Notes under the pieces: model-generated
Told to the model about the DNA's origin: nothing
The model's database searches: none
The model's input: only the letters and a program-made list of their open reading frames with translations
Shown here: one piece after another, positions 1 through 21,300 of the stretch
How the letters are laid out: each line of letters begins with the position of its first letter
Numbering within the stretch: position 1 is the stretch's first letter
Source: Trichoplax adhaerens
Lineage: Eukaryota > Animalia > Placozoa
Length of the DNA stretch: 64,000 nt
NCBI RefSeq assembly: GCF_000150275.1
Contig: NW_002060947.1
Coordinates: forward strand, 3,650,980-3,714,979
Reading direction: 5' to 3'
Position numbers and translations under genes: made by a program

Positions 1-3000
1 CCTATATATTAAAATTACCATTTTGTAGTATCTTCTTTTAGTATGTCAAAAAATTTTACTTTTACAATTTCTATTATAATTAAAGTGTACAAAACATTTT
101 TACTTCTAATTACTGATCAATATCTAATAGCAAAGATACTTATTTCAGTTGCAACTTATTAATAACAGTTTTTCAAAGGTCTAAATGTTTATTAATACAG
201 TATAACAACGGTATACATGAAATATATTTTATTTTATGCCTCGATGATGAAATCTATAGTATTAATTTCTTACATTAATAGGTGTTTGAGACTAGAAGAA
301 TGATAGCGAGCAATTAATCAAATATATGGCAACAGTAGTAAATTCTAGATGTGAAAGCCGAGTTATCTATGTAAAATATGCTTAAGCTCATACTGATTAA
401 AAATTGATATTGCAAAGTTTACTCACGTTGAAACCACGCCTATAATTAACATTTTGTATAAGAACACGAGCGGATATCCATTAAATAAGTAATAATTAAT
501 TCCTGGAGTAACCCTTTCGATGAGAGTTTATATTTTACAGACTGAAGAGCACAACAAGTGATGAGAATTCCAATCATGCTTGAAATCCTATAAACCTATA
601 TGTCCAATACTCAGTGTGAAAGCAAAATAAGAATGGCTTAGCTAAAGAGTAAGAATCTATTTCTGTAAGTTAACTCTAATACCGTGTCAAGATTTACAGG
701 ATTGAAAAATAAAACGAAAAATGATTGACGATAATATTTAATCAACTAAGCTATCTGTATTAAACAATTAAAACCTAGGCTAATAATGATTTTACGTATA
801 ATATATCTTATACTATAGTTAATTCCCATTGATTGAACTAAAATCAATGAAAGTTTACTATATAAGGATCAGCATCAGTAAATACTTTATTAGAGATATA
901 AGCTACCAGTACCATTCTTCTATCACGGTGCTTCATCGATAATTTGGAATGAACAAACAAGATTAATCTATGGGATTAACAAAAATGCAAAACCAGTTTG
1001 TTTCTGGATATTATTGGCTAGAATTTTGTTCATTTAATCGGAAATGCAAAAAATTTATCTATTCAAAGTATTTACCATAGCCCCTATGAGTACGAAAATC
1101 TTAATATCGCTACCAATTTCATACAAATCTATCCCGTTAGTGACAATTAAACTGTTATAAAGATGAAACTTGCGTGGTAAGTAACGAAAGATAAAAGAAT
1201 TCAAAATTTGAAACTACAAATGAAATAGAAGCAAATTAAATCGCATTCCTAATATCAACTTCAAAAAAAAATGCCTCAATGCTATCCTATAGTGCATACG
1301 AGTATGGTATATTAATTGAACCTATCTTATTTAAATCATTTCTTGCTTTATTTTTAACTCATTCTAGCCCAGCATATAAAACTATATGCCATTAAATTGA
1401 TAATATGGAATACTGTAGATGATGTATTTCTTACTGATCAGCAAGATTCAATTACTAGAAATCATAAAAAGAAAGTGTTCGGAAGGATCGTTGATCAATT
1501 CTATTAAAACTTTCACATAAAATGATCATAAAAAAGCATAAAATTTTCTGTTATGATTAAATTAAGTTATTAATTATTTTTAGACATTGCTCTTATGGTA
1601 TTGATACATAAGCTTAATTGACAAAAAAATACTATTTTTAAAAGTCATCGGTAACAAACTTTCTTTTATTCTATAGATAAGAAAGACATTTAAACCTCTT
1701 CAAGATCTACTTGCATACAGAAAGTATTTAAGGCTTAAAGTTTTCCATAATGATGGAATCAATAGATCTTATCAATTTTTTAAATAATGCCAAGAAAATA
1801 TTCTAGAACCTTAGTCGAATTAAACAATAGTAACTTTTAAAATTTAAATGTAAGTATAGATGTTTTTCCTACCTATTAGTTGGATTCTGCGTCTCATTAA
1901 TTGAATATCTAGCTAGTACATCAATCAATATATAATAGTAAAGGTAATAAACGTTATTAAACTCTTTTGGTTATAAGGAAATAAAAAAATATCAAGAATA
2001 TCTCAACTAATACTGTAATTAAATTCATTTTGATTCAATCTATTCATTATCTTATAGTTATTCCTGCTCTTAATTTGTAAGCAAATAAAATACTGCCTAT
2101 TTAGCTAACGCCCCAATAAATGTAGACGATGTCTTATTATCGATTTGTCTCTATCTCTTTGTAGAAGTTATTTATATGGCTCAGTTCGTTCATATGCTGA
2201 ATGAAAGTTCAGGGGTAAATCATATTAATTACTATCCATCAATCTTACCGAATCTATAGCACAATTACGATCATTTACAATCACTCAATTTATATTTTAT
2301 TTTAATAAATTACATTTAAATATCAATTTTGATCGTTAATATAAGGCTTGCAATAAAGTTTATCTTTCATCTATCCACAGTCGTCTTCTATTCCTTCTCT
2401 CTATGTACCTTACATAAAAAGGCAATGGAACAACAGCAGTCGGAGTTATTGCAATATCATTGTCTCAGAACTTAATCAATGAAGAAGAAAATACAATAAT
2501 CCTATTTGATATAGGACCATTATTTGAGGACGATAATATTGCCATGGTAGAGTATTCATTCAAAGAGAAGGAATATTAAAAAATTAAATTGTCGAAAAGA
2601 AAAAATGTCAGTCACGAAATTAATCTATATCATCTACTAATTAGTCCAGTGTAATAGAGAATTAAAAATAAATAAGACAGGACAAACAGTAAGAAATATA
2701 AAGACATTAGTACTTAAATCATGTTTTTTCTTCCAATGTAGTTTTAATTAACATGACGTCTCTAACATCCTGCGCCAATTGATTTCCATTACAATGATGA
2801 CGTTGTCAAGGCCATATTACAACTTATTTGCTATGGCTACGCGAGAAATAACGCTAGACTATCATAACCATTAAATATTGATTAAATCTCCCTAACGCAT
2901 TGTTGTTAAACCTGATTTCCAAAAATCAAGTCGCAGTGTTAACACTTCCCTTATATTTACCCTCGAACTCTTCACATCGCAAAATACAATGACTTTTTAA

Positions 3001-3596
3001 TCGTTTTCATGAAGTGACTACAAACGATTTTACATTCAAGATAACCATACTACCATCAAATATACAGTATCTTTTTTATGTTGGTATTTATTCGGGCCGC
3101 TTCAGGACGAAGAAGTATCTTTATCCTAGTCAGCATAACTCTACAATTGAGTAATATTCTATTTGGTGGATACTAATCAAATTTTATGATCTCGATTTCA
3201 TGCCAACCTAAGTGGAACAAATCATTTTTCACTCTTCCTTCTCATCATTATCAACTAAGAATTATACATATATATATACCACTTTCGTTGGGTATGCAAG
3301 TTTACCAATGATATTGAGTTTATACCAACACAAGTAAAACAAATTATTGCCAAAATTCTTTCAATTCTTCCAATTTGTTATCATTAACTAAGAATCTTCT
3401 TATTAATCTCAGCAAAAAAAAGTTCTAATTTACCCAAGACAACGCGTTCATCATCATTGAAAACAGAAGTACTATCATTTTTTATCAAAATACTTTTGTA
3501 CGTCTTAGTATAAAAATTGATTATTATAACTTAAACACTACAATAATATAAATTATAAAGGGGATTAAAAAAATTCCGTCATCAAAAGTTTCAGCT

Positions 3597-6212
3597 ATGA
3601 ATAACAGCCAATATTTGACCAATCTGATAATAATTACTTTTATCTACTTGGCTCTGATAATGCCCTCTATTCGACACATGGCTGATGGAAGCCAGGGTAA
3701 ATCTTACGCATTTAAAGATGGAGATATCATTCTTGGTGGGTTATTTCCAATTCATGAATTTCTATCTGATCAAAATTGCGGTAATATAAGAGAAACAGAA
3801 ATTTCATTACAATTAATGCATGCCATGATCTACGCTGTTCAATCTATCAATAACAGAAAGGATCTATTACCAGGTATACAGTTAGGATTTCAAATTCGCG
3901 ATTCCTGTTCTCGTGACACCATTGCATTAAAAGAATCTCTACTAATGCTAACTCGCCCTGATTCTAATTTCAATACCAGCCTCGCTAGTCAGTATAAGAT
4001 ATTACCAAGTTGTGCTAACAATAATTCACGAAAATATAATAATGCTTCACAAAAACGCATTGTTGGCGTTATCGGACCGGGCAGTAGTCGTGAATCAGTT
4101 CTTGTTTCTGATTTATTAAATATCTTTCGTATACCACAAATCAGTTACAGTTCGACTAGTGATGACTTGAGTGAGAAAGAGAGATATAAATATTTCCTTC
4201 GTACTGTTCCTCGTGATTATCTACAAGTCCGTGCAATGATTGATCTATGCTTACACTATAATTGGTCTTATGTTCAATTCGTCTATTCTGAAGGCAGTTA
4301 TGGTGAAAATGGATTTAAAAATTTTCGTTCACAAATTACTACTCTCAATCTATGTATCGCTGCTGAATATGAACTAGCTCAATCGGCGCCTACACATCGC
4401 TACGATACAGTAATGAGTAGTATACTTAGCAAAAGTAATAAGGCTAAAGTTGTAATTTTATTCTGTAATTGGGGCGAAATGGCAAAATTATTTGAAGCTG
4501 CCGATCGTGCTAATGCTGCTGGTAGGATAATATTTATAGGTAGTGACGATTGGACTACTAATACTTATTATATGAATAGTAGTAATTATGTCGCAGAAGG
4601 ATCTCTTTATTTTCAACTTCATGGCGAGTATGTTAGAGATTTCGATCGTTATTTTACTCAATTAACGCCGTATAATGTGGATCGAATACAAGATCCATGG
4701 TTTAACGAATCTTGGCAAGCTAATTTCAATTGCAATCTTCCACCAGCGACAGAAAATATATGTGACAAAAGTTTACGATGGACTAATGTAACGGGTGGAT
4801 TTACTCAAGGTCGTAAAATAATTTATGTTATTAATGGTGTGTATGCATATGCACATGCTCTTCATAATATGCATAAAGAATTATGTAAAGGAAAATCAGG
4901 TTTATGTTCAGCAATGCAATCGATTGATGGTCATTTATTATTCAAGTATTTGTTGAGAGTAAGTTTCATGGATATTGCTAACAGCAGTCATGTAGAATTC
5001 GATAATCAAGGAGATATTAAAAATGGGGGTTACGATATTGACAATTTACAAAAAGTAAATAAAAGTTACATTTCAAGAATAGTTGGTATATGGTTGTCAG
5101 ATGATTTATCATTAAGAAAAGATACAATTCAATGGTCAATTGGTAATTCAAGTCATATTTTAGAATCGGAATGTAGTCAGCCATGTCAGGAAGGACTATT
5201 TAAGATTATTAAGGAAGAAATTTGCTGTTGGGTGTGTACTAGCTGCATTAGCAAGCAGTATTTTAATTATAGTTTAAGTCAATGCGTTGACTGCCCCATA
5301 AATTACTGGCCGCATCCTAACCGAACATTTTGTATTCCAGTTGATATAACTCATATCAATCTCCGTGATGGTATTTCCGTCATTTTAATCATTTTCAGCA
5401 TTATTGGGATGACATTTGTTGCCTACCTCTTTTATGTTTATCGAAAATTTAACAACCACCCCACAATCAAAGCATCAGGACGAGAGCTATGCTACTGTAT
5501 CATGTGTAGTTCTATCGTTATCTCCATTAATTGTATAACCCCTATTCCAAAGCCAACTATTTCTCTATGTGTTTGGTATCGTGTAGCGACTGGTTTAAGC
5601 TTTTCGTTATGCTATGGCTCATTATTAGTTAAGACAACTCGAATCTATCGCATTTTTCGTCATAGCAAACAGAGCCTAAAAAGGCCATCCTTTACCAGTC
5701 CAAAATCGCAAATTTTGTTCGTGTCGACAATTGTAATTATACGCTTACTCGTTGTTATTACTTGGGTAGGATTAGAACCTCCTGCAATCCAGCGTGAATA
5801 CTACGATTATGGCAAAGAAATTCACTTAAAGTGTAAGCATGCAACAACAGATATGATCATATCAACCTCTATTGATGGCACCTTGATTGTTTTATGTACT
5901 GTATTTGCATTCTTAACTCGACATCTTCCTGAAAATTATAATGAAGCGAGATTTATCAATTTCTCGATGTTTGCCGTTATTATCGTTTGGTTGGCATTTA
6001 TTTCGGCTTATTTTACATTTAAAGTTAATTTACAACCAGTCATGCTTGCCATTACTGGTTATATTTCGGTTATGGCAACCTTACTATTTGTTTTTGTACC
6101 TAAATTATATGAAATATTCATTAACAAGAGGACTAGCATGGCTCCTAATAATTCCGTCGTCGAGCGTGCAGCTGCAGCCGCAGCTACTGCAGGTAATATG
6201 ATTATTGCATGA
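3597..6212 (+). CDS. Class C GPCR, metabotropic glutamate receptor-like (Venus flytrap, Cys-rich domain, 7TM); intronless; 871 aa
   Basis: Single long ORF with an N-terminal hydrophobic signal. VFT motifs GDIILGGLFPIH, IGPGSS, PQISYSSTS, RTVPRD, GSDDW. CRD SECSQPC..CCWVC..C. 7TM motifs IKASGRELCY, KTTRIYRIF, PENYNEARFI, LFVPK. Confidence 0.95.
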   Translation: MNNSQYLTNLIIITFIYLALIMPSIRHMADGSQGKSYAFKDGDIILGGLFPIHEFLSDQNCGNIRETEISLQLMHAMIYAVQSINNRKDLLPGIQLGFQIRDSCSRDTIALKESLLMLTRPDSNFNTSLASQYKILPSCANNNSRKYNNASQKRIVGVIGPGSSRESVLVSDLLNIFRIPQISYSSTSDDLSEKERYKYFLRTVPRDYLQVRAMIDLCLHYNWSYVQFVYSEGSYGENGFKNFRSQITTLNLCIAAEYELAQSAPTHRYDTVMSSILSKSNKAKVVILFCNWGEMAKLFEAADRANAAGRIIFIGSDDWTTNTYYMNSSNYVAEGSLYFQLHGEYVRDFDRYFTQLTPYNVDRIQDPWFNESWQANFNCNLPPATENICDKSLRWTNVTGGFTQGRKIIYVINGVYAYAHALHNMHKELCKGKSGLCSAMQSIDGHLLFKYLLRVSFMDIANSSHVEFDNQGDIKNGGYDIDNLQKVNKSYISRIVGIWLSDDLSLRKDTIQWSIGNSSHILESECSQPCQEGLFKIIKEEICCWVCTSCISKQYFNYSLSQCVDCPINYWPHPNRTFCIPVDITHINLRDGISVILIIFSIIGMTFVAYLFYVYRKFNNHPTIKASGRELCYCIMCSSIVISINCITPIPKPTISLCVWYRVATGLSFSLCYGSLLVKTTRIYRIFRHSKQSLKRPSFTSPKSQILFVSTIVIIRLLVVITWVGLEPPAIQREYYDYGKEIHLKCKHATTDMIISTSIDGTLIVLCTVFAFLTRHLPENYNEARFINFSMFAVIIVWLAFISAYFTFKVNLQPVMLAITGYISVMATLLFVFVPKLYEIFINKRTSMAPNNSVVERAAAAAATAGNMIIA
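4149..5011 (+). repeat. Left arm of an 863-bp perfect inverted repeat (partner 13939-14801)
   Basis: Line-by-line comparison with the reverse complement of 13939-14801 showed no mismatch. Identity extends with 3 mismatches back to about 4083/14867. Confidence 0.95.
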
Positions 6213-9200
6213 TCTATTACTACCTTTATTCATTAAGGACTTACGAAGAATGAATTAGTAATCATCTAACTGATGACAATTGAATTTAAGTATAAATTCT
6301 ATGATTGATCAATAATAATTGTTCATTGCTTTCGCCTAACGGACAATACATTTCAGTTCTTCGGTATTATCATCCGTCGTTAATTTTGCTATAAAATTCG
6401 ATAGCGCTCCATTTAATTTAGCTTGTAGTTCATATATAACTTCAATACATTATATGGTACATTATAGCAAGTTAAGTAGATACTAATTTAGCTACTCGTT
6501 AATCGTTCTTTGTCACGATGCATTGAAAGGATGTACCATTAGCAAGGGAAATTTGATAAATCTGCATGTCATGCTACTATATTAATTATAATAGTCATAG
6601 TAAATATAAAATCCTTTCTTCAGTGTAGTATCATGTAATCAATACCAGTTTTACAATCTAAAATTTATTGTGTTATTCACAATACCGCGTCTAACTATAA
6701 CGGATAGCTAGTTATATTAATTGCAATCAGGCTATAATCTTAGATACAGCAGAATATAAATCAAGTAACCAATTGTTATAATGATTTTATCATTCCTTAA
6801 TTTATCCATATCACCATTTGTTGGTACATACTAGCCATAATGCACAATCCTAAGACGTTATTTCAACAGCGTCCAAAGTTAGTAACACGAACTACAATTA
6901 ACTTAGAGCAGTAATACTTACCATCTTCTAATACCTAGAAATTATCTCATAGACGTAGGGTAATTAATCGAATAGAATCGATAACCTCCATGAATTAGTA
7001 TTTTGTAATAGTTCATCAATTTAACATTCAAGATGATTACAGTCGACCTATTTCTCTCCGTAGGTTACATAATTTAATTTATTCAGGTTAAAGATTGGTA
7101 GGCGATATTATCTACTAATAATTGATCATCTACTTGTACCATATCAACTACAATCTAGATAAATTTTATAACAACTTTATATCAGAATATACATACAACA
7201 CAAATTACCTGCATTATACCACGTATGATTCATTTTAAACACAGCACATAAGCGTTTGTAAGTTTTTGATCAACTACCTTTGCCTCCATTTAATATCTAC
7301 TGTCGGGATCCAACAAACGTAATGAAAATTAATTAAATAAGTTTAAATTTTGGCTGAAATAATGTAACAGTTAGCTTTATATCTTTCCTTTTGAATTGCT
7401 AATATTAGAAATATTAGTATTTTATTTTATCTTATATTTATTCAACAGTCGGAAATACTACGACAGTAGGCTGAGACATGAGGCATTACACCCTAACTAC
7501 GCACTTTTAGTATTTCATGGATAAGTTAGCCAATAGAGTACAGTACGCAAAAATATAGTTTATAATAATGCCAATAAAAGTAATTCCAGTATTAAAAGAA
7601 TCACTCAATTTTTACTCTTTACCGTATCATGAAAAATAACCTAATAATGAACTACTACGTCGTTCTTAGATATAAAGTTTGTGATTTTTAATACAACTGT
7701 GTCTTCTAATAAGTTTAGTAATAAATACGTGACCAAATACCCTTTTATTCACAAAAAAGGTCCTACATATCAGTTATAATTTATTACATATTCAATACGT
7801 GAGATATATCATTAAATACAATTTAAATTATACAACGTAAGATCACTAATTTATGTCTCTTGAAAATTTTTCAGTCCTCGCTCAAGGAGAAATAGAATGC
7901 TATGAATCAGTGCCATAATTACATACTGATATGAAATGCTATCTAATAAATATTCGCTGTCCCGCCATCTTCAGAAAATACACAATACAATGCTGTCTTC
8001 ACATATAGTTTACTAGATTCTTAAAGGGACTCCTACGTACTGATAGCCTATGGGAATGATCATCCATTATGAATTCTACTTCTCTTCCAAGACTAATAAA
8101 TTTCTATCAACATTCGAATGAAGCATTCATAGCTGCACTGACTAAAACCTTTTGTAATCATTTTAAGCTGTAAATACTAGGCGGAAAAAGTTTGCATTAA
8201 GCCTCAATTCTTTATATTGATTTATAACTGTATTATAAGTATCGTATATCGTTCGATCCTGCCATTATGTAAGAACTGAATGCAATAATAATATTTTAAT
8301 TAGTAATAACACTGAACCCCGTTTGACTCGGTTTTTCTAGAAAGAGAGTGTTGAATAATTCACATTCACTACGTACTACACGTGATGAATGATAATATAA
8401 TTTAAAGATAGCCATTGAACTACATAAAGAAATAGTCTTAAGTAAATTTTTTCGGTGCTAATTATATATATATATACTTGGTTCTATTTTGATGGTCTTG
8501 AAGTAAATAATAAGGCCAAATTCTATAAAGAATGATAAATGTCTCTTGACTACTATGTAATATCAGCTATGGAATACTATGTATTCGTTGTAACTTAACA
8601 AAGACTTTTGTGTAAATCGACTTATGTAGTGAAGAATTTTCTTCTATATTGATGCATCAATTCTCTACTATTTTTCTGAATTATATAATTATTCATAACA
8701 ATAAATAAAATTACTCTAAAACTTAAGGTCAAAGTTCATTTCCTCAACGATTCTAATAATGTGCAATTAGATTAAATATTAGTAACAATCAAATTATTTT
8801 AACTTGCTTTCAAAAACTGTAATCGAAATCAAGAACCGTATACTGTATGTGCAACCTAGAATACTAAGCTCTATTAGCATTGAGAATTTCAATCACCATT
8901 ATTGATCTGATGCTGTAATGGCCAACCGTAGATCTACTCGATATTATCTTGGGATAGAAAATTTAATAAGTTTAAAATTCTTACAAAATGTTGAATTTAC
9001 TTGCATCTATTTATACAACTTGTATTACTGAATACCAACACTCAATAAAATCAACCAACCGAAATCGTCCTAGAAATCGTAGCATTTGAAGATTACAGTA
9101 AAGTTGTGAGGGCTAATCAAGATCAACTAGGTTACTCTGGCTATTCTATTTTTAAATTCTCCATAAAGACTGTTACTAAAATTCAACTACGCAAAGATTC

Positions 9201-12200
9201 TTGGTGAAATCCTGACTTTATCAGCAATGTAACAATAGTACTAAGGATTTATAACCATATTCCTTCAAATATATAAACGCGTAAAAATTAGAGCTATTCC
9301 AATTAATCTAGATCGACCAAGATAGCCTACTCTACTGTGAAATTTGCAGCTTTGAATTTTGTTCTTAGAATTTCTCTATGTAAATGTGTAAAATGATTGT
9401 ATGTAGTCTAGAAATATAACAATATAAAGGTCGGATCTAATCTATCAGAATAAGCTAATTTTTAATTCAATCATCTCTCTAGCAAATCTACTATTCAATC
9501 ATTCAATGTCTTAAAGCTCTACTTTTTTGTGCAGTGCTATGGCCGGGCCCGTACTGTCAACAAATCCAACAGTAGAGTATTACGTATCTACTAGTAAGAA
9601 ATTAGAGAACATGACAAAATTGGAAAGATATTAATCCACGACTAAGTCAACTATGTCCTAAGAATTTGTATCCTACTACATCGTAATTAATCCTCAAATA
9701 TCATGAAGTTGTGTAAAAATTCTTTTACTGTAAATGCTAGCACGGTCACTAAGATGCGGTTAAGAATTTACGTCCTAGTAGTTCGTGATTTATAAATTTC
9801 ATTAACTTATGTAGGAAATCTTTTACCGCAAATGCTGGCTAAGTCACTCAAAAATTTAAGGGATTTAGCTTAGACAGAAATAATTCAATTTCATATGCTC
9901 TAGTGACTTATCACCTTATCACGCTCTTTCTTCTGGCGTACTTAAGTCAAAATGTACAATTTTATTAGCTTATACTGTACTATGCATTCATCACCACATA
10001 GATATTAATTGTCAGTGTCATAATTAGGCCTACCGGGGATAGAATCTAGCATATAAACCCGTACCGTAAATGCCCTAATGCGCAGTCAGTATGCGACATA
10101 ATAAATACTTTAGGCGTGAATGTTGCAAAATAAAAAATAAAGGAAATAAGGCAATATATTGAATTTGATTATTTCTCTAACAAAATATTGATATCATACA
10201 ATGAATAACCAATTAAATTCCTCTACCTTTTCTCGATTACAGTATATGGCTAATAAAATACAATATTAGAATGAATCAACACCATCTTAAGAAGTGTGTG
10301 CACTTACGTATTAATAGTTTACCAAACGCAATATAGGTGCGCGAAAGCTTCTATCATGAGTACTCATATTATAGCTCAGAAAAGTTTACATCAAGATCTA
10401 CAAAATCAGGCATTAAATAGTTACATCATTAAAGCGAAAAATGAGATTTAAGCTGTTAGCAAACTGGGTCAAAAACTTAATTATCAACTCAAAATTTGCT
10501 ATGATTTAAAGACAAGAATTATTAGGGTTTTGGAAAACATCTAATGAACGTTCTATAGTGCATTATAGTACTAAATTCAATATCTTAAAAAATGTTTTTG
10601 ATAATGTATCGTAGCTAATATTCACAGAAATATCAGAAAAAATTGACTGATGGCGATTAATTTTCCTTCTCTTATTAAATTGTAAGGATTAAGTAAGGGC
10701 GTTGTCGTATTTATTCATATTCATATATATTTAGTAAATGTATAATCGGCATTTTTTTATCTTCCTATTGCGATTATCAATAACGTGTAACACAGCAGCA
10801 TGGTTGCCATACTTATATTTGTTAATGACAGATTGCTAATAAGGTCTGACGTAATATTCAATCTTTAGAATTAATTAATTATTACGCTAAGTTAAAATAG
10901 TTGTTTTGCAGCAGAATTGAATATTTAAATACTAATCATTAGTGATTTAAATTTAATGCACAAACATCGGTGCATGCCATATCTATTTAAATGCTCCCTT
11001 ATCGAAACGTAATCTTTAATTATATATTTTTATAATAGTTTGATTTGTATATTGAAAAATTTTCTGATCTATCTCCAAAAATAGCTAATTCTGATCAATC
11101 TTTTAAACTTTATTTAATTTTTTATTGATACACTCACACGTGCAATTTGAGCTATACAAGCGTTAACGGTAAGGCAATATAAGTCATATAATCAAATTGC
11201 TATAGAATGATATTTTAGAATATTCCAAAGCTAAATGCTAGTGTTCTTTTGCCCAGTAACAAATAAATATGTTCTATAAATAGAATAGTGAGTATAAACC
11301 GATTACAGATCTGATGAAGAAATCATATCTCATTTATATTTTACAAGTATCATAAAGTGAAAAACAAATCATAACAAATAGTTTATTTATTTCAATACAT
11401 AACATGTAATCAAACTGGGCAGTTCAATACTAATAAAAACTGTTATTAGAGATAAAGAATTGAAATGACAGAAAGCAATCATAATCTTTGCACTAATAAT
11501 ACCGTAATAGCAACGTGGTACTTGAAATTTAATTTAACCTGTATTATTTGAAGACAGTCCAACAATTTTACTATAAATCCTATCGTGTTGGCAATCATTT
11601 ATAAATTAAGTAATTTTTCTCAAATTTACGGTTAAATAAAATAAAAATAAATAGTTCCGCTCCTGTCTATATATATGTTACTATATATATAGAGTATACA
11701 TGCGCACATAAATACCGTACCGTACAAATTTATTTATTCAATCGTCTCATACAGTATGCGCTCATGTGAAATATACATTCTATTATAAAATATTCTCTTG
11801 AGAGTACTTATTCCATCTATAATATCACGATCTGTTGGCCTATTAAATGTTCTAGAAGTTAATTTAGTTCTACAACAAACGGCATAAGTCATGACTGGAT
11901 TTTAAATCAAAATAATACGCGTACTTAGATAATCAAACGATTACTGGAGCGACTGCTAGAATGGTGGTCATATTGAAATTGGATCAGTACCTTTAATAAA
12001 TCCTACAATTACATTTATGTAGTAGTCCAAGTCATATCATGAATACATGGCACATGCATTACACAATTTTAGTTTAAATACTATATGTAAATTTTAATAT
12101 CGGTATACTTGTGATACTCGAAACTGCTAGATTTTAAGCTCAATTATTATTATACATAGATTTTTATAAATGCTTAAAATTCTTGCATTACCTAAATCTT

Positions 12201-12725
12201 TAGTATTTGAACCATTTCCAGTTGACGCATCGATGTGATGATCATTATAAAAGCTTAGTTGCCTACAAGACTAAAATTTTAACCAGATTTCAAAATACCC
12301 TTAATACATTAACGCATATGTGCAGTTATTTTCCTTAATAAGATATATCACAAACGTGATTTATCTCAGAAACAAACTATCCCTAATCAGTAACATGATA
12401 ACAATAGCAGGTATGGAATCAATGTTTGGTTACTACAGAATATATCAACCTCCAATCAATCTCACACCGCATAATAACAGTAAAAGTAACATTTATTTTA
12501 TCGAACTTGTCTTATACTGCACCACTAACAGTCAAGTTGTTCAATTAGTATTGGCATATATGGTAGTCAATAATTAATGCCGATAATATGTATTCATATC
12601 AATCATTTTTAAAAGATTGCGCCTGATTTTCCTTTAAGGATCGCAAAATAATTGTAATTCTTATTTACAACAAGTTCATAAGATGAAAATATTTGTAAAT
12701 TCGGAGGAATTAATACTTTAAAAAT

Positions 12726-15347
12726 TTAATGGCCCCCTAGAAATAAATTTCCGCTAGATAATGTAGCCGTTGGTGCTGGTTTAATTGCAAGATTATTTGA
12801 CATCCCATGAACGTTTCCATTGCTGAAACCAAATATACGTAATAACTTGGGCACAAATAAAAATAATATGGTTACCGTTACAGAAATATAATCAGCAATA
12901 GGGATAATCAAAGGTCGCAATCTGGGATCACTTGTAAAGTAGGCTGGAATAAAAGCTAGCCATACAATCATGACTGCAAACATGGAGAAATTAATAAATT
13001 TTGCTTCATTAAAATTTTCCGGCAAATGACGAGTTAAAAATGCAAATACAGTGCAAACAATGATTAAACAACTGTCAGCACCTAATGTAATCACCATTCC
13101 AACGACAGATTCATTACATATTAATCTTATTTCTTCGCCATGCTTATATTCTACGCGACGCACTCCAGGTGGCTCTATAATAATCCAAACAAGTACAATT
13201 AACAATCGTAAAGCCACAATGGTAGCTACCATAAATAGTTGTGATCTAGGGCTAATAAGGGATGGACGTTTTAATGTTGCATTATTATGATTAAAGATTC
13301 GATAAATTCGTGTCGTTTTAACAAATATAGCACCATAGCATAAAGAAAAGCTAAACCCTATTGAGATTCGAAACCATATGCATATTGGCATATTCGGTCT
13401 CCATAGTGGTACTACGCAGTTAGTACAAATGATACCAAAGCTAAACATAATGCAATAGCAGAGCTCACGTCCTGAAGCTTTAATTATAGGATGAAGATTA
13501 AATTTAACGTAGATAATTACCAACGAGATTAAAAATGCTCCACCCATTCCAGCGAAGATAATTACGGTAATTGCAATTGCCTCTTCGGCTTCCATATGGG
13601 TTATATTGACTCTATTACATGCTGTTCTATTTTGTTGCGGCCAATAACCCGCTGGACAGTCAATACACTGGCTCAGAGTATAATTGAAATACTGTTTGCT
13701 AATACATTCAGCACATACCCAACAACAAATTTCTTCTTTAGTAATTTTAAATAGTCCTTCCTGACATGGCTGACTACATTCCGATTCTAAAATATGACTC
13801 GAATTACCAATCGGCCAATAAATATCGTCTTCGCTTAATAATAAATCTTCTAACATCCACACACCAACTTTTTGAGATCGATAATTATCACTTTTCCTTT
13901 GCAAGTTATCAATATCGTAACCTCCCTCCCTGATATCCCCTTGATTATCGAATTCTACATGACTGCTGTTAGCAATATCCATGAAACTTACTCTCAACAA
14001 ATACTTGAATAATAAATGACCATCAATCGATTGCATTGCTGAACATAAACCTGATTTTCCTTTACATAATTCTTTATGCATATTATGAAGAGCATGTGCA
14101 TATGCATACACACCATTAATAACATAAATTATTTTACGACCTTGAGTAAATCCACCCGTTACATTAGTCCATCGTAAACTTTTGTCACATATATTTTCTG
14201 TCGCTGGTGGAAGATTGCAATTGAAATTAGCTTGCCAAGATTCGTTAAACCATGGATCTTGTATTCGATCCACATTATACGGCGTTAATTGAGTAAAATA
14301 ACGATCGAAATCTCTAACATACTCGCCATGAAGTTGAAAATAAAGAGATCCTTCTGCGACATAATTACTACTATTCATATAATAAGTATTAGTAGTCCAA
14401 TCGTCACTACCTATAAATATTATCCTACCAGCAGCATTAGCACGATCGGCAGCTTCAAATAATTTTGCCATTTCGCCCCAATTACAGAATAAAATTACAA
14501 CTTTAGCCTTATTACTTTTGCTAAGTATACTACTCATTACTGTATCGTAGCGATGTGTAGGCGCCGATTGAGCTAGTTCATATTCAGCAGCGATACATAG
14601 ATTGAGAGTAGTAATTTGTGAACGAAAATTTTTAAATCCATTTTCACCATAACTGCCTTCAGAATAGACGAATTGAACATAAGACCAATTATAGTGTAAG
14701 CATAGATCAATCATTGCACGGACTTGTAGATAATCACGAGGAACAGTACGAAGGAAATATTTATATCTCTCTTTCTCACTCAAGTCATCACTAGTCGAAC
14801 TATAGCTGATTTGTGGTATACGAAAGATATTCAATAAATCAGAAACAAGAACTGATTCACGACTACTACCAGGTCCAATTAATCCAATAATTTGTTGGCG
14901 TTGAAAACGTTCATCAATTTCAGGTTGTGAGTCATTAGCACATCTTGGCAGATTACGATACTGATCTAAAAAATTACCCACCGAGTCACGTCCATTAGGA
15001 GTTAACATTAAGATCGATTCCCTTAATGCGATGGTATCCCTTGAGCAGGTGTCATGTATATGGAAGCCTAACTTAATACCAGGTAATAAATCTTCTCTGT
15101 TGTTTATGCGTTGAATAGCGTAGATCATGGCATGCATTAACTGTAATGATATCTCAGTCTCTCGTATTTGGCCACAACTTTGATTTGAACTGCTAAATTG
15201 ATGGATTGGAAATAATCCACCAATAATAATATCACCAGGTTGATAGCCGTAGGCTCTATTATCAGATAAACTGTCATTACTTTGAACCAGGATCGACGTA
15301 ATTAAGATGAAATAATGTAGTGATATATAGCTTAATAGATGTAACAT
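12726..15347 (-). CDS. Class C GPCR, mGluR-like paralogue; intronless; about 873 aa from the first ATG (MLHLLSY)
   Basis: Same motif set as the first gene. The ORF track starts at a TTG (15380); the first in-frame ATG is at 15347 and precedes a signal-peptide-like hydrophobic stretch. Confidence 0.95.
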   Translation of the reverse strand: MLHLLSYISLHYFILITSILVQSNDSLSDNRAYGYQPGDIIIGGLFPIHQFSSSNQSCGQIRETEISLQLMHAMIYAIQRINNREDLLPGIKLGFHIHDTCSRDTIALRESILMLTPNGRDSVGNFLDQYRNLPRCANDSQPEIDERFQRQQIIGLIGPGSSRESVLVSDLLNIFRIPQISYSSTSDDLSEKERYKYFLRTVPRDYLQVRAMIDLCLHYNWSYVQFVYSEGSYGENGFKNFRSQITTLNLCIAAEYELAQSAPTHRYDTVMSSILSKSNKAKVVILFCNWGEMAKLFEAADRANAAGRIIFIGSDDWTTNTYYMNSSNYVAEGSLYFQLHGEYVRDFDRYFTQLTPYNVDRIQDPWFNESWQANFNCNLPPATENICDKSLRWTNVTGGFTQGRKIIYVINGVYAYAHALHNMHKELCKGKSGLCSAMQSIDGHLLFKYLLRVSFMDIANSSHVEFDNQGDIREGGYDIDNLQRKSDNYRSQKVGVWMLEDLLLSEDDIYWPIGNSSHILESECSQPCQEGLFKITKEEICCWVCAECISKQYFNYTLSQCIDCPAGYWPQQNRTACNRVNITHMEAEEAIAITVIIFAGMGGAFLISLVIIYVKFNLHPIIKASGRELCYCIMFSFGIICTNCVVPLWRPNMPICIWFRISIGFSFSLCYGAIFVKTTRIYRIFNHNNATLKRPSLISPRSQLFMVATIVALRLLIVLVWIIIEPPGVRRVEYKHGEEIRLICNESVVGMVITLGADSCLIIVCTVFAFLTRHLPENFNEAKFINFSMFAVMIVWLAFIPAYFTSDPRLRPLIIPIADYISVTVTILFLFVPKLLRIFGFSNGNVHGMSNNLAIKPAPTATLSSGNLFLGGH
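13939..14801 (-). repeat. Right arm of the 863-bp perfect inverted repeat (partner 4149-5011)
   Basis: Reverse complement equals 4149-5011. The two proteins are identical from IGPGSSRES to FDNQGDI. Confidence 0.95.
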
Positions 15348-18300
15348 GTTTCCTACTACTACGAAATCTTTTACCCTCAAATGGCTGAAATATATGCGTT
15401 AATCAGTACCGTAATTTAATAAAGTTAAAGACTCTTAAGTCTAGTCATAAAAGCAGATTCTCTTGTTAGTGATATTTGGTTCTAATCCAATGATCGCTGG
15501 CTTTGCTTGTGTAATATTCACTTTCGCGGCTATGCACGCAATCTATTTCAAGGACTCTTCCAACAACGATGGCTTTATACGAATGAAGGTATTAATCAAA
15601 TATCACATTCAAGTAAGTATTCACGCTTGTCAGCACCTTTTACTTTAATTCCTTAAATTAAGTATTATTGGTAAGGCTTTTATAATTTTAACTGAAAGGC
15701 TCAGCTAATGTGACACATCATATGGTATAATAACATATATTAGAACCAGGAATAGATGAAAAATTACTTTTAAATTCTTTAAACTGATAGCAGCGCCCAA
15801 AAATTCATAAAAGATTGGAGTAAAACACTAAGGTAAAAATATTTCTCTTGAAATCACTTTTGCCCAAAATGTGGATACACTTAAAAATGATGAATCCTGC
15901 GATATTTCTTGACAATACGGCATATAAAATAAGTGATGTTAGGCTAAGAGCTAATCAAGGACAACCGATATCTCACATTGAATACCGATGCTACAAATTA
16001 GAATTAATAAGGTTGGACAATCTGCCGAGAAAAGCTATACGGCAATAGAGAATGCACTGACAGTAGATGATATTATTGATCTATAGGTTATACAATAAGG
16101 TAGGCTAAATGTCAAGGCTATATACCAGAGATTTGACCTCTCTCGAAAAGGTATTGCCAGCAAGAAGAATCGGATACAACATCCGCTTATTTATTGTAAT
16201 AAAATCACAAAGAAAAATTAATTATTTGCATGAGATCAAAATCTCAACCTACATCATCGATACGTTGATAATAACATCTCCTGCTGATTTAACGATAGTG
16301 TGATAAAACAAATTGCTGAAGATGATAACGACCAGTTATAGTTTAATCATCAAGTATTAAGTATGAGATAAAGTTGTACACTAACACTGCAATAGCAATG
16401 CTTTAATTACTAATAAGATGCGTACAAGATAAGAATCAATATTATTTTACATAAAATAAGTCGGAAGTTAAACACCTGTCGTTGTATTGTTAAAAGAATT
16501 TAGTTTTCTTGAATGATAGAGCTTATTAATATCTCCTAACAATAAATTTCAAAGTAAATATCAAATCAGAAGTAGAGATAGAAGGTATAGCGATTTACTT
16601 CGCGATTAAATAACAATTATAATAAACTATTACTTACGTAATTGAAATGCTAAAAATGACCTTTTCTTCTTCCGTGGATGGCGTTGCAAAGCTTGAAGTA
16701 ATGATTGCAATAGATTATATCATAGGCTTTGTTCTGTCGTCAACAACCCTTAACACCACAAGATAACAGTTCTAGTGATACTGTTATACCCACATATGAA
16801 TCTTAATATATCGTAAATTTACTATATTTTATTTCTCTTGACTAATAATATTTATGTTTTAGCTTTGCTCGTTTGAGATGAAATTGAAAACGAAATTCTT
16901 TCGGTAATCATACCACCCATTATTACGGATAGAGAGTTAAGACTCGTTTTTAATCGTCACGTTCATTTTTAATGAAAGAAAATTTTTATCTAATTTCACG
17001 AATTTCAGATTTGACAGTGATTAAATCTAAATCTACTTAAAAATATTACTAAAATTCATATTACTTTGAGCGATAGAAAATGTGTTGCTGGATAAAAAGG
17101 GTTCTAATGATTAACTATATGACTCGGGATTCAAAAAGTAGCTAGTAATATATCGTATTTCTTCAAGAAATTATTTTGGAACGAACTGTTTAAAAATGAT
17201 GCGTAGCACCAGAGAACAATATATTCAGAATAAAATTTTACTTGAGCTTCGTCTTATCTCATAATTTTACATTTTTGGTTTGGCAGTTTCTTCCTTCCTT
17301 TTATTAGCCTCTAAATTATTTTAGTCAGATATTTCGTGTGAGAAATTCGCAATTAAATCTTTGCCTAATTACGACTTTATAAAATTACTTCATATAAGGT
17401 CTCCAGATATGTCTAGATACTTTTAAATTTGCTGTCTTCATGCTACAATTTGTCTAAACCAGTTAGCCTGTGATACTACCTCACAGATATCCCTATAATA
17501 CCACTCAATTTAACTTTTAATTTTACTTTTGAATCGAATTATCTATATATATGTATATTATTTTATGTCGAATCGACAAAATAGGATAATTTCAATCAAT
17601 CTTTGGATCAAAGTCTTCGCTATTTACCTTTTTCTTTCCTGACTAAATATTATTAAGAATATTCTGTAATTCAACAAATTATCTGAAACATCCAGACACA
17701 GAGATCAAAGATTACAATAAGTATAATGTAAAAGATAATCTTTATCGTCTACAAATGAGTTCTTTATCATCAATAGGGAAACTGGACACTTTCAACACTT
17801 GTCTATAACAATTGAAGGTATTTTAATCCAGCAGTCATACAATTAAACCGACTTCAGTCCTCGAACTTTATCGTTATTTACTACTTTAAATAGTCTGTTA
17901 ATTGATACATGATAAATGTTGTTCATATCAAAACGAGTTCAATTCTGTTAGGATCTTAACAATGCTAAATTGGATATCATTAACTCGATCATGACATTGC
18001 TTTGGATTGATAGATTCAAAATTTTAATTTTTTTATATAAAAATCGCCCATAAAAGAACCAATTAGCCTAAAAATATGAATAAAAAATCGTATAAATAAA
18101 TTTATATCCTATAGTTATCAAATTTTGATTTTTTTTAACTTTGTCTTAATAAATGGGTTATGTAAAATTATAAGTATTAATTCTTTCTAACAATTTACTG
18201 TTTAATAAAAGCTTGACGATGATAAAAATTTCGAAACTGATAGTAAGTGCACGAAAGCATTAAAAAATCTTATAAAATTCATTTATTCTGACGCCTTCCG

Positions 18301-21300
18301 CGAAAACAGTATAAGTATACCTTCTTTATGCCTAGTTCATACCGTAGGAGTACTGTATGAATTCTACATCATGTACTATTAAGAACATGAAATTAAGGTA
18401 CTTCTCGATTAATCAGAGTGATGAAATCGTACATATAAATTAGTTTTGGCAAGTACCTATCTAAGTGACAGGCTATAATTCTTTCTAATAACTTGTTGTT
18501 CAATAAAACTTACATAATTAGGGTTTTGATGTAGCTAACATTAATTTCGTGAAACTAACACGAAAATCGTGCTATAGTTTACTGATTATAATATTAGTAA
18601 ACTATTAACAGCGATGATCAGTTGACATCGTTACTATACAGTAACTTATATTTTGTAAATTTGTCTTTATATAAAGTTTTGAAATCTTTACTCATCTTGT
18701 AAATAGTAAGTGTTAAATCTATCTTATAAAAAGTATTCTATTTGCTTAGTGTTATGATACGGCATCGGCCAATTCACCATCAGTTACTTCATTGATTATG
18801 ACCCTAATTATAATTAGTCAAAAAACAGCTGTGGTCTGGTTCATCATACTATGCTTATTTACCTGCATTATTGTAATGAAACTGTCTTAATAAGTTCTCA
18901 TAACAATTCATGTTGTTTTTAAGCTTGCTACATGTAAATAATTGGTATAATTTAATGAAACTTCGTAGAGTCTAGCAATGTACATAAAAATGTGAAGCTG
19001 GGTGCTTTTAAAATTAAAAATATTTATTGATTATAATCAATCATATCTTACCTTTAATTATGTCATATCGTATGCATTTACAACGGACAGTAATATTAAT
19101 TAACATAACTTTTGAATAAACACATTTTATAGGAGCTGTCGCTGTTTCTGGTACTTATAATTTTGTGACACCGTTATTACAGAAACTTTAAGTTTAGTTA
19201 TTAAATATCCTTTCAGTTCCTTTACTATCTAAACAATGTTATATCTGTAAATAACTTGAAAAACTGCCGTGTCTTAGCAGTAGTACAAAATATCACACTG
19301 CAACAGTAAATCGGCCACAGTAAGCTCAAGTTTGAAATAGTAAGATAATATTCGTATTCTTTGTTTAATATCGCTATAGTATTCTAAATTCCTACAATAA
19401 AGCGTAGATTTATTTGTTCATTATTATTAATATTGATGTTATAGTATGATTTATAAAGTAGAATCGAAACTGAACATGTAATAAGCTGATTTGATATTGC
19501 GTTGAAACTATAGTCTCATGAGATTGAATTATTTATTAAGTTAAGGCAGTATAAACAAGCATTAAATCAGAAGAATATACTGTAATAAAAGAAAGAGATC
19601 AATTATAGTTATATACTTTTCACGTAGCTGTAATAAATTCGTACACTGTACATAAAATTAGATAAGAAATTAATCGTGACTGGGCAATTAGAGAATATCT
19701 ATGAGTTATAGTATTAATTAAAGGTCCGGTACCTACTTTCATGCAGTAATATAATCGCGGTGTTTATTCTACTACGGTCGTAAAAATGAATTACATCATT
19801 CTCATAAAATAACAGGAATCTGAGAACACCTGCCTCATCATCCCAACTTATACCTCCTACTTTTGCTGTCACTAATCCTCGATAATAGCATATAGGATAA
19901 TTTAAACATGAGATTGTAAGTAGATTTGTCTATGGTGAGGTCTGGTCTAAGTATATTATTTTATTTCAGTAACTATCATAAAGCATCTTATACTTGTAAT
20001 ATTCATTGATATAATGTGTCTCTACGGTCTTACAAGCGATAAAACAACCAAACATTTCATAACAACTTTCCTTAACATATACAAAGGCAACACTTAATGA
20101 CGTATTTTTGGCAGATATACAATACTGCTATCATTTTTTGTTCACAATTAATAATACATATACTATTACTTAATTCAGTTATAAAAAATATAATGTACTA
20201 GTATTTTTAGAAATTTAATCATTCAATTTTATTTTGATGGAACGCTACTAAATAAATAATTTGATATCTAATAACTTGGCTTTTTTTATAGTATTAAACT
20301 TTGTAATTTTTCGAAATCGTGTGTGGGAATTCACGTTGTAGCATATATTTTAAAACAATGGATTATCTGTATATGATAAACGATTTGCCTATTTTGTAAA
20401 CTTTTCATATGAGGATCCAATACAGTATTTCGAATATTGTTTAGTGATCAGAAAAAAACTAGTATAATTGTTTACTTCAAGACTTCTGCGCTAAATGATG
20501 AGATTTTAATCTCTATTCATGAAAATGCGATATAGCTGTTAATATCATATAGCATATTAAGAAATTGAATTGAAATATGATCATAAATAATAAAATGCGA
20601 TAGTAATCAAACGTTAAAGTGACTGATGTAAAAACGATTCATTTATTTACTAGGATAAGTATAAATTAGCGAAATAAATTCAATTTACGAGTTTATATAT
20701 GATTAACTAGAAGATTCATTTCTTTGATCTCCACAATTTATACATTTACGATTAAAACTCTGACTCGATTATTCACAATTTTAACGTTACAGTAATTAAA
20801 CTTTTACTTTAAATTTAGCTGTTATTAAATAGACTGAAGTATTCAATTAAAAATCTACGATACGCTTGATGTATATCATAAATGACATCTTTTATAACTA
20901 TATCTCGTAAGACTTTCAGTTTTTCTACTTAGAAAAAGTATTTTAGATATCATTCACTACTATAAACACAGCTACTGCGGTATAAAACAAGGTTTTAGCA
21001 CATTGGTTGCTTAAAAAACTACATCATTTTATCTTCTTGTTCATCTAGGAGGTTATGATTGGACGATGAATAAAATGCTAACTGTTATTGAATGTCAAAG
21101 AAGTTTTATTAGCGCAATCTTTAATAGATGATGTAATTACCTATCCTTTCTTTAGCAGTGTAAACTGTAATATAGTTACAATTTGGAAATTATACTGATA
21201 AATTATGATTTCGTGCTTGTTTGTATAGACTAATTCTAAAATGATATATGATAATACGTAAGAGGGCGATGACTAAAGAAATTTTGATCTCGTTAGCACT

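What the first reader, a model, noticed from the sequence alone, without database searches (positions are those of the whole stretch)
4149..14801. Two facing GPCR genes share an 863-bp perfect inverted repeat: candidate invertible receptor cassette
Seen: 4149-5011 is the exact reverse complement of 13939-14801, including every synonymous site, while the N-termini and 7TM regions differ at many amino acids and silent sites. The arms flank an 8.9-kb spacer (5012-13938) holding both CRD+7TM halves and both 3' UTRs. Inference: one crossover between the arms would flip the spacer and keep both ORFs in frame. That would join promoter and N-lobe A to 7TM B and vice versa, giving four possible receptors from two genes. 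Non-crossover resolution of the same pairing gives gene conversion, which would keep the arms identical. No recombinase is visible, so ordinary homologous recombination is the implied mechanism.
Basis: partly seen in the sequence, partly recalled or inferred. Interest (0 to 1): 0.85.

Follow-up and report, generated by a model that had tools for sequence, protein, structure and literature searches.

The report
Gene conversion between two glutamate-receptor paralogs
Two neighbouring, oppositely oriented glutamate-receptor-type genes of the placozoan Trichoplax share a real, perfectly identical 863-bp stretch because one gene copied part of its ligand-binding domain onto the other (gene conversion), an ordinary process; nothing shows that the DNA between them flips.

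Summary
Window 4149-5011 is the exact reverse complement of 13939-14801. It sits inside two convergent, intronless mGluR-type class C GPCR genes that are otherwise about 37% diverged at the DNA level.

The identity is real. In four public runs the tract forms one collapsed contig at twice the flank depth, and the Trichoplax sp. H2 assembly has the same tract boundaries.

The window is the 2008 Trichoplax adhaerens assembly. Outside the tract, gene B groups with its orthologue from a more distant placozoan. Inside the tract, A and B group together. That is the classic signature of interlocus gene conversion, and B was probably the donor.

Partly re-diverged shoulders suggest repeated exchange. 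So does an A/G polymorphism at 4990 that appears linked to both genes' flanks in two runs. A second receptor pair, in direct orientation, shows a 2.4-kb tract, so the process is general and needs no inversion.

The invertible-cassette idea is geometrically valid, because both arms are in the same codon phase. It has no support: no recombinase is present, the spacer is unique and non-coding, and the ancestral N-term/C-term linkage is preserved.

It is also untested. All available runs are k=31 contigs, and the H2 assembly was guided by the reference. The finding is a new member of a known kind, of modest interest.

The parts
3597..6212 (+). Gene A: intronless mGluR-type class C GPCR (871-aa ORF). 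The first 21 codons are uncertain, because the H2 model starts at Met22 (850 aa).
   Evidence: ORF. Pfam ANF_receptor 1.3e-72, NCD3G 3.3e-10, 7tm_3 5.7e-58. Best solved relatives are mGluR3/1/2 at E about 1e-165. RNA runs X19/X20 hold 0.41/0.39 of the words of 3000-8999, roughly the share that the CDS makes up.
12726..15347 (-). Gene B: intronless mGluR-type class C GPCR, 873 aa from Met at 15347. The mechanical ORF starts at a TTG at 15380.
   Evidence: ORF. Pfam ANF_receptor 4.3e-71, NCD3G 6.7e-11, 7tm_3 1.3e-59. 72% aa identity to A. Protein P0002 is identical in the H1 and H2 assemblies. Met position.
4149..5011 (+). Arm A: the conversion tract, gene A codons 185-472 (core of the Venus-flytrap ligand-binding domain).
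   Evidence: Exact identity. Collapsed 2x-depth contig in 4 runs. Codon phase 0.
13939..14801 (-). Arm B: the same tract in gene B, codons 194-481 of the 884-codon ORF.
4047..4148 (+). Left shoulder: reduced divergence, with only 3 mismatches in 4083-4148. With the tract and the first codons to its right it gives a 316-aa identical protein stretch (A residues 159-474).
5127..5216 (+). Right shoulder in the cysteine-rich domain: 8 differences in 90 nt, including an exact 53-nt run (5151-5203) that is also a 2x-depth contig. Probably an older or shorter conversion tract.
   Evidence: Contig 5150-5203 at depth 181/75/72 against about 72/38/29 in the flanks.
6213..12725 (.). Intergenic part of the spacer between the two stop codons. 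It is unique in the genome and has no ORF of 100 aa or more, so it holds no recombinase or transposon.
   Evidence: No gene is called there in the H2 annotation.
4990..4990 (+). Variable site inside the tract (A in the reference, G elsewhere). It is codon 465, CAT His / CGT Arg, at a CpG. It appears linked to both A-type and B-type right flanks in runs X1 and X2.

Best explanation
The 863-bp perfect inverted repeat is a tract of interlocus (ectopic, non-crossover) gene conversion. It lies between two old, convergently oriented mGluR-type paralogs of Trichoplax. The duplication predates the split from a more distant placozoan lineage, so the genes have diverged to about 63% DNA identity outside the tract. 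Later, homologous-recombination repair of a break in one gene used the paralog about 9 kb away as template. That copied the core of the Venus-flytrap domain from one gene to the other, probably from B into A. The partly re-diverged shoulders and a polymorphism apparently shared by both genes suggest that such exchange happened more than once and may still occur. One consequence is that the two receptors have identical ligand-binding cores (316 identical residues) but different N-termini, 7TM domains and tails. The ability of the arms to support an inversion is a by-product. Shown: the identity, two copies in real genomes, phylogenetic incongruence, and a second tract elsewhere in the family. 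Inferred: the repair mechanism, the donor direction, and recurrence.
For: (1) Exact identity with sharp ends inside diverged paralogs, silent sites included. (2) Real in independent data: 2x-depth collapsed contig in 4 runs, and the same boundaries in the H2 assembly. (3) Incongruence. Outside the tract the tree is (A,(B,C)) with support 89/89 and quartet sites 16 BC|AO against 3 and 3. Inside it A=B, with quartets 5:0:0. C is the orthologue of B on an ENA contig that also shares B's upstream element. (4) The in-tract distance to C is 0.215, against 0.54 (B-C) and 1.02 (A-C) outside, which favours B as donor. (5) Mosaic shoulders at 10-20% silent divergence, against 45-60% elsewhere. (6) In X1 and X2 both 4990 allele contigs end at 5011 and both flank types start at 4991. 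In X4 and X6 the flank contigs start at 4982. This is as expected if A/G at 4990 occurs in both paralogs. (7) A direct-repeat pair of the same family (L031/L032) has a 2.4-kb tract at about 99.8% inside 60-70% identical CDS. Conversion is therefore general in this family and independent of orientation. (8) No recombinase or other gene lies in the spacer.
Against: The donor direction rests on one outgroup and on regional rate assumptions. The 'shared polymorphism' at 4990 is inferred from contig end points, not from reads. It sits at a CpG, so recurrent mutation could mimic it. Between the H1 and H2 assemblies the arms differ at 2 of 1726 sites, against 7 of 3545 in the rest of the CDS (P = 0.34). 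That shows no measurable extra homogenisation, although both assemblies are unphased consensus sequences. A crossover history with an even number of inversions cannot be told apart from none.
Confidence: 0.85

Rival explanations
1. Invertible receptor cassette. Crossovers between the arms regularly flip the 8.9-kb spacer, in the germ line or in somatic cells. That would recombine promoter + N-lobe of one gene with the CRD + 7TM of the other and yield four receptors from two genes as a used mechanism of diversity.
For: The arms are inverted, perfectly identical, 863 bp long and in the same codon phase, so a crossover would give in-frame chimeras. Nothing available here could have detected a second orientation: all runs are k=31 contigs that break at the arms. 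The H2 assembly was extended with the H1 reference as guide (PMC6057997).
Against: No recombinase, transposase or any ORF of 100 aa or more lies in the spacer or arms. B's 5' flank, N-terminus and 7TM all group with the single orthologue C, so the reference orientation is the ancestral linkage. Only non-chimeric proteins are on record. A direct-repeat pair in the same family shows the same kind of tract, where inversion is impossible. The arms became identical only after conversion, so they were not built as recombination sites.
Confidence: 0.03
2. Occasional, unprogrammed NAHR inversion. The arms sometimes cross over, so inverted alleles with chimeric genes segregate at low frequency as a by-product of the conversion-made identity. 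This is compatible with the best explanation.
For: 863 bp of perfect identity at 8.9 kb distance exceeds the minimal homology that supports ectopic crossovers in other eukaryotes (general knowledge, not tested here). Conversion tracts show that the arms do pair.
Against: No observation of the inverted form exists. The Sanger assembly gives one orientation. The ancestral linkage is retained.
Confidence: 0.1
3. Assembly artefact: the true arms differ, and the assembler wrote one consensus into both places.
For: The reference is a 2008 Sanger draft of a heterozygous diploid.
Against: The k-mer depth of the tract is twice that of the flanks in four runs from at least three studies. No internal bubble occurs in 4149-4957. 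The H2 assembly has the same boundaries.
Confidence: 0.01
4. Extreme purifying selection on the ligand-binding core keeps the segment identical, without any DNA exchange.
For: The segment encodes most ligand-contacting motifs of the Venus-flytrap domain.
Against: All 288 codons are identical at silent sites too, whereas 45-60% of same-amino-acid codons differ elsewhere. The same segment differs at 51 residues from orthologue C.
Confidence: 0.005

Closest known systems
Concerted evolution of inverted gene pairs by gene conversion (for example the Drosophila Hsp70Aa/Ab inverted pair, and arm-to-arm conversion in human Y-chromosome palindromes). Cited from general knowledge.
   Same: Paralogs lie in inverted orientation a few kb apart. 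A block of identity includes silent sites. The flanks are diverged. Ordinary homologous-recombination machinery acts, with no dedicated recombinase.
   Different: Here only an internal 863-bp segment of the coding sequence is homogenised, plus the shoulders. The rest of both genes stays about 37% diverged, so the products are mosaic rather than identical.
Interlocus gene conversion in clustered chemosensory and receptor gene families (olfactory receptors, TAS2R, opsins OPN1LW/MW). Cited from general knowledge.
   Same: Short conversion tracts occur between neighbouring receptor paralogs and create mosaic genes. A second tract in a tandem pair of the same family was found here.
   Different: The host is a placozoan and the family is class C GPCRs. 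I found no earlier report: a full-text search for Trichoplax + 'gene conversion' gave nothing on this locus.
Inverted-repeat-mediated (NAHR) inversions such as human FLNA-EMD or F8 intron 22. Cited from general knowledge.
   Same: Highly identical inverted repeats flank a unique segment, and arm identity is maintained by conversion.
   Different: In those cases both orientations are documented. Here only one is seen, and no suitable data exist. The arms are also much shorter and lie inside coding sequence.
Prokaryotic invertible cassettes and shufflons (Hin/Gin invertases, hsdS shufflons).
   Same: The only likeness is the idea of swapping protein modules by inverting DNA between inverted repeats.
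   Different: Those systems have a site-specific recombinase gene and short defined sites. Neither is present here.
Metabotropic glutamate receptors (class C GPCRs).
   Same: The full ANF_receptor + NCD3G + 7tm_3 architecture is present. Identity to bilaterian mGluRs is 35-38%, and solved mGluR3/1/2 match at E about 1e-165. T. adhaerens is reported to have eleven mGluRs, some of them orthologous to classes I-IV (PMC6307864).
   Different: The genes are intronless. The residue aligned to the glutamate side-chain-binding Arg of the 'GIQR' motif is Leu in both genes (the residue's role is from memory). The ligand may therefore be another amino acid.

Membership tests
Interlocus (ectopic) gene conversion tract | A block of identity with sharp ends inside otherwise diverged paralogs | tested here: met
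   863/863 identical, against 662 differences in 1753 sites outside. Ends at 4148 and 5012.
Interlocus (ectopic) gene conversion tract | Silent sites homogenised as well, so protein-level selection is not the cause | tested here: met
   0 of 288 codons differ silently, against 45-60% elsewhere.
Interlocus (ectopic) gene conversion tract | Phylogenetic incongruence: paralogs group inside the tract, orthologues group outside | tested here: met
   Outside (A,(B,C)) with support 89/89. Inside A=B. Quartets 16:3:3 against 5:0:0.
Interlocus (ectopic) gene conversion tract | Present in real genomes, not only in one assembly | tested here: met
   2x-depth collapsed contig in 4 runs, and the same boundaries in the H2 assembly.
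Programmed DNA inversion switch / shufflon | A site-specific recombinase encoded at or near the invertible segment | tested here: not met
   No ORF of 100 aa or more in 6213-12725, and the spacer is unique in the genome.
Programmed DNA inversion switch / shufflon | Both orientations present in a population of cells or strains | not testable with these tools
   All 24 runs are Logan k=31 contigs that break at the arms. The H2 assembly is reference-guided.
NAHR inversion polymorphism | Inverted repeats of high identity and several hundred bp | tested here: met
   863 bp at 100% identity, 8927 bp apart.
NAHR inversion polymorphism | The inverted allele is observed | not testable with these tools
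   Same limitation as above. Indirectly, the ancestral linkage is retained.
Class C GPCR, mGluR group | Venus-flytrap (ANF_receptor) + cysteine-rich (NCD3G) + 7tm_3 domains in that order | tested here: met
   All three domains lie above the Pfam cut-offs in both genes.
Class C GPCR, mGluR group | Closest solved and annotated relatives are mGluRs | tested here: met
   mGluR3/1/2/5 at E 1e-165 to 1e-156. Named hits are mGluRs at 34-38% identity.
Class C GPCR, mGluR group | Conserved amino-acid-binding motifs of the flytrap pocket | tested here: inconclusive
   The GSS, SST, D, Y, D and K motifs align with mGluR3. The Arg of the 'GIQR' motif is Leu. Residue roles are recalled from memory, not tested.

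The most novel reading that the evidence does not exclude
The conversion-made arms do cross over at a measurable rate in clonal Trichoplax lineages. Animals or cell lineages would then carry the flipped spacer and express chimeric mGluRs (A promoter and N-lobe with B 7TM, and the reverse). That would be an animal analogue of an invertible receptor cassette. A milder version is that recurrent conversion is selectively maintained, so that two receptors with different G-protein-coupling domains share one ligand sensor.
Probability: 0.07. Interest if true: 0.65.

Novelty: new member of a known kind. Interest (0 to 1): 0.25.

Why it matters
The locus is a clean, datable example of ectopic gene conversion in a placozoan, an animal lineage thought to reproduce mostly clonally. 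It shows that homologous-recombination repair between paralogs shapes its large intronless class C GPCR family.

There is a practical consequence for functional work. The two mGluR-type receptors have identical ligand-binding cores but different 7TM domains and tails. They are therefore a natural 'same sensor, different transducer' pair.

Short-read expression or variant calls in 4149-5011 and 13939-14801 cannot be assigned to one gene. The finding also warns that synteny of the H2 assembly with H1 is not independent evidence across repeats. It does not establish a new mechanism.

Tried and rejected
(1) Assembly artefact: rejected on the 2x depth and the H2 boundaries.

(2) Using H2 collinearity as proof of a fixed orientation. 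H2 aligns at 99.46% over window 1-16209. I withdrew this argument after reading that the H2 assembly came from 150-bp reads with 500-bp inserts and was extended with AlignGraph on the H1 reference.

(3) Testing orientation with reads: not possible. All 24 runs are Logan contigs, there are no raw long reads, and the contigs break at the arms.

(4) Searching for an A-orthologue or fragments in other placozoans, to date the duplication and look for an independent tract. The full-length query found only the B-like P0003. The 7TM-only query found nothing above 44% identity. L033 has no second gene in the 4.6 kb downstream.

(5) A rate test for extra homogenisation between H1 and H2: not significant (P = 0.34), and weakened because both assemblies are unphased.

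(6) An apparent 299-bp exact match between L025 and L032 was not recovered by BLAST, so it is probably low-complexity flank sequence. It was dropped.

(7) Searches of earlier scan notes for similar cases returned nothing.

(8) The first two four-way comparisons failed because H2 gene A has a 1-bp indel after the ATG. This was fixed.
Full report
**Observation**

Window 4149-5011 is the exact reverse complement of 13939-14801: 863 of 863 bases match, and the match stops precisely at 4148 and 5012. The repeat finder sees the wider homology 4054-5356 / 13594-14896 at 93%, plus two weaker arm pairs that cover the rest of the coding sequences. The genome holds only these two copies. The spacer between the arms is 8927 bp.

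**The genes**

The only long ORFs in 1-20000 are 3597-6212 (+, 871 aa) and 15380-12726 (-, 884 codons, 873 aa from the Met at 15347). Both carry ANF_receptor, NCD3G and 7tm_3 in that order. Both match solved mGluR3/1/2 at E about 1e-165 and annotated bilaterian mGluRs at 34-38% identity.

They are convergent (tail to tail) and 72% identical in protein. The next paralog is only 32% identical, within a family of at least 39 intronless class C GPCR genes.

**The organism**

The genome has 105.6 Mb in 1414 contigs. Gene A clusters with 'Metabotropic glutamate receptor [Trichoplax sp. H2]' RDD45886.1. The window is therefore the Trichoplax adhaerens H1 reference. T. adhaerens is reported to have eleven mGluRs, some orthologous to bilaterian classes I-IV (PMC6307864).

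**Why the identity is neither chance nor selection**

- Outside the tract the genes differ at 662 of 1753 aligned sites.
- 45-60% of codons that encode the same amino acid differ silently there. Inside the tract none of 288 codons does.
- The corresponding probabilities are about 10^-178 and 10^-75.
- The tract covers codons 185-472 of A, in codon phase 0 in both genes.
- With the adjacent conserved residues, the proteins are identical over 316 residues (A 159-474).

**Is the identity real?**

Yes. I laid the Logan contigs of four runs (at least three studies, two organism labels) on 3000-8500. The tract forms one collapsed contig, 4083-4989 or 4083-5011, at about twice the flank depth:

| Run | Tract depth | Flank depth |
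|---|---|---|
| X2 | 72 | 29-38 |
| X4 | 45 | 24 |
| X6 | 68 | 22-30 |
| X1 | 166 | 71 |

Beyond 5011, both A-type and B-type continuations are present at single-copy depth. The short exact run 5151-5203 is likewise at 2x depth.

The Trichoplax sp. H2 assembly (L034) has the same tract boundaries. It differs at two sites near the right end: 4958 (G in the B copy) and 4990 (G in the A copy).

**What the tract is**

An ENA contig (L033) carries a 66-72% identical gene, C. Three results show that C is the orthologue of B from a more distant placozoan, so the A/B duplication is older than that split:

- C shares a conserved element with the upstream flank of B (L033 292-419 with window 16435-16561).
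- Outside the tract, sites polarised with five bilaterian mGluRs give 16 BC|AO against 3 AB|CO and 3 AC|BO.
- The maximum-likelihood tree outside the tract is (A,(B,C)) with support 89/89.

Inside the tract A equals B, and the quartets are 5:0:0. This incongruence is the defining signature of interlocus gene conversion.

The in-tract distance to C is 0.215 changes per site. Outside the tract the distances are 0.54 (B-C) and 1.02 (A-C), while the stems to the outgroups are similar in both partitions. B was therefore probably the donor and A the acceptor. This step is inferred.

**Recurrence**

Next to the tract lie shoulders with intermediate silent divergence. They look like older or shorter tracts.

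| Region | Same-amino-acid codons that differ silently |
|---|---|
| 4047-4136 (left shoulder) | 5 of 25 |
| 5127-5216 (right shoulder) | 3 of 27 |
| Rest of the coding sequence | about half |

In runs X1 and X2 the collapsed contig ends at 4989. Two 52-nt allele contigs span 4960-5011, at depths 54 and 63 in X1. Both the A-type and the B-type right-flank contigs begin at 4991. In X4 and X6 the flank contigs begin at 4982.

In a k=31 graph this pattern arises only if both alleles at 4990 are joined to both flank types. So the A/G polymorphism (His/Arg465, at a CpG) appears to occur in both paralogs. That points to exchange after the polymorphism arose, or to recurrent CpG mutation. It is an inference from contig end points, not from reads.

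A simple rate test between the two assemblies shows no excess homogenisation: 2 differences in 1726 arm sites against 7 in 3545 other CDS sites, P = 0.34. Both assemblies are unphased consensus sequences of admixed diploids (PMC6057997), so this test is weak.

**Generality**

Among the 30 family loci fetched, one further pair shows the same phenomenon. L031 and L032 are direct tandem neighbours about 7 kb apart on contig C1404. They share about 2.4 kb at about 99.8% identity, with exact runs of 784, 841, 315 and 294 bp. The rest of their CDS is 60-70% identical and the flanks are unalignable. Conversion therefore operates in this family regardless of orientation, and it is not confined to the ligand-binding domain.

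**The invertible-cassette idea**

*Geometry.* The idea is sound geometrically, but nothing supports it as a mechanism.

*No recombinase.* The intergenic part of the spacer (6213-12725) is unique in the genome and has no ORF of 100 aa or more. No gene is annotated there in H2.

*Linkage.* B's 5' flank, N-terminus and 7TM region all belong to the same lineage as C. The reference orientation is therefore the ancestral linkage.

*Proteins on record.* Protein databases hold only the two non-chimeric proteins.

*Origin of the arms.* The arms became identical only through conversion, so their capacity for crossover is a by-product.

*What stays untested.* The key prediction, two orientations, could not be tested. 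All 24 runs found are k=31 contigs that necessarily break at an 863-bp repeat. I first took the collinear H2 assembly (99.46% over window 1-16209) as independent evidence. It is not: that assembly came from 150-bp reads with 500-bp inserts and was extended with AlignGraph on the H1 reference. The 2025 chromosome-level T. adhaerens genome is a Micro-C rescaffolding of the same 2008 assembly (PMC12221973). Rare NAHR inversions therefore remain possible and untested.

**Comparison with known systems**

The locus behaves like classical concerted evolution of inverted or tandem paralogs. Examples from general knowledge are the Drosophila Hsp70 inverted pair, Y-chromosome palindromes, and olfactory, taste and opsin clusters. 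The difference is that only an internal coding segment is homogenised.

It lacks the defining parts of prokaryotic invertible cassettes. It shares with NAHR inversion loci only the presence of inverted identical arms.

A full-text search for Trichoplax with 'gene conversion' returned nothing on this locus. I rate it a new member of a known kind.

**Verdict**

Interest is modest (0.25).

Noticed in passing
L031 and L032 (G000:C1404:1591632-1594148 and 1598855-1601314): A second conversion tract in the same class C GPCR family. Two direct tandem genes share about 2.4 kb at about 99.8% identity (exact runs of 784, 841, 315 and 294 bp). The remaining CDS is 60-70% identical and the flanks are unalignable.
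   Followed up: partly
window 3597-3615 (start of gene A): The first codons are unstable. The H2 assembly has a 1-bp insertion after 3607 that cuts Met1 off from the hydrophobic signal-peptide-like stretch, so its model starts at Met22 (850 aa). Runs X1, X2 and X4 instead show A>C at 3610 and T>A at 3612. X6 shows no indel here. The insertion is either an H2 assembly error or a real N-terminal variant.
   Followed up: partly
window 16435-16561 and L033:292-419: A 129-bp element upstream of gene B is conserved at 74% in the distant placozoan contig. It is a candidate promoter or regulatory element, and it supports orthology of L033 with B.
   Followed up: no
window 3786-3845 (gene A residues about 64-81; the same motif occurs in gene B): In the alignment to mGluR3, the Arg of the 'GIQR' motif is Leu in both genes ('ISLQLMHAM'). 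From memory, that Arg binds the glutamate side-chain carboxylate. The backbone-binding Ser/Thr/Asp/Tyr/Asp/Lys motifs are kept. The natural ligand may be an amino acid other than glutamate.
   Followed up: no
L034 (Trichoplax sp. H2 NOWV01000012.1) as a whole: The H2 assembly was extended with the H1 reference as guide (AlignGraph; PMC6057997). Its collinearity with H1 across repeats longer than the 500-bp insert is therefore not independent evidence. This matters for any other finding in this genome that leans on H1/H2 synteny.
   Followed up: yes
window 3000-8500 in runs X1, X2, X4, X6: The variants of the four runs and the H2 assembly are shared in a mixed, non-nested way, for example at 5297, 5552, 6130 and 4990. 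This fits the reported allele sharing and admixture between the H1 and H2 lineages, and unphased diploid consensus sequences.
   Followed up: partly
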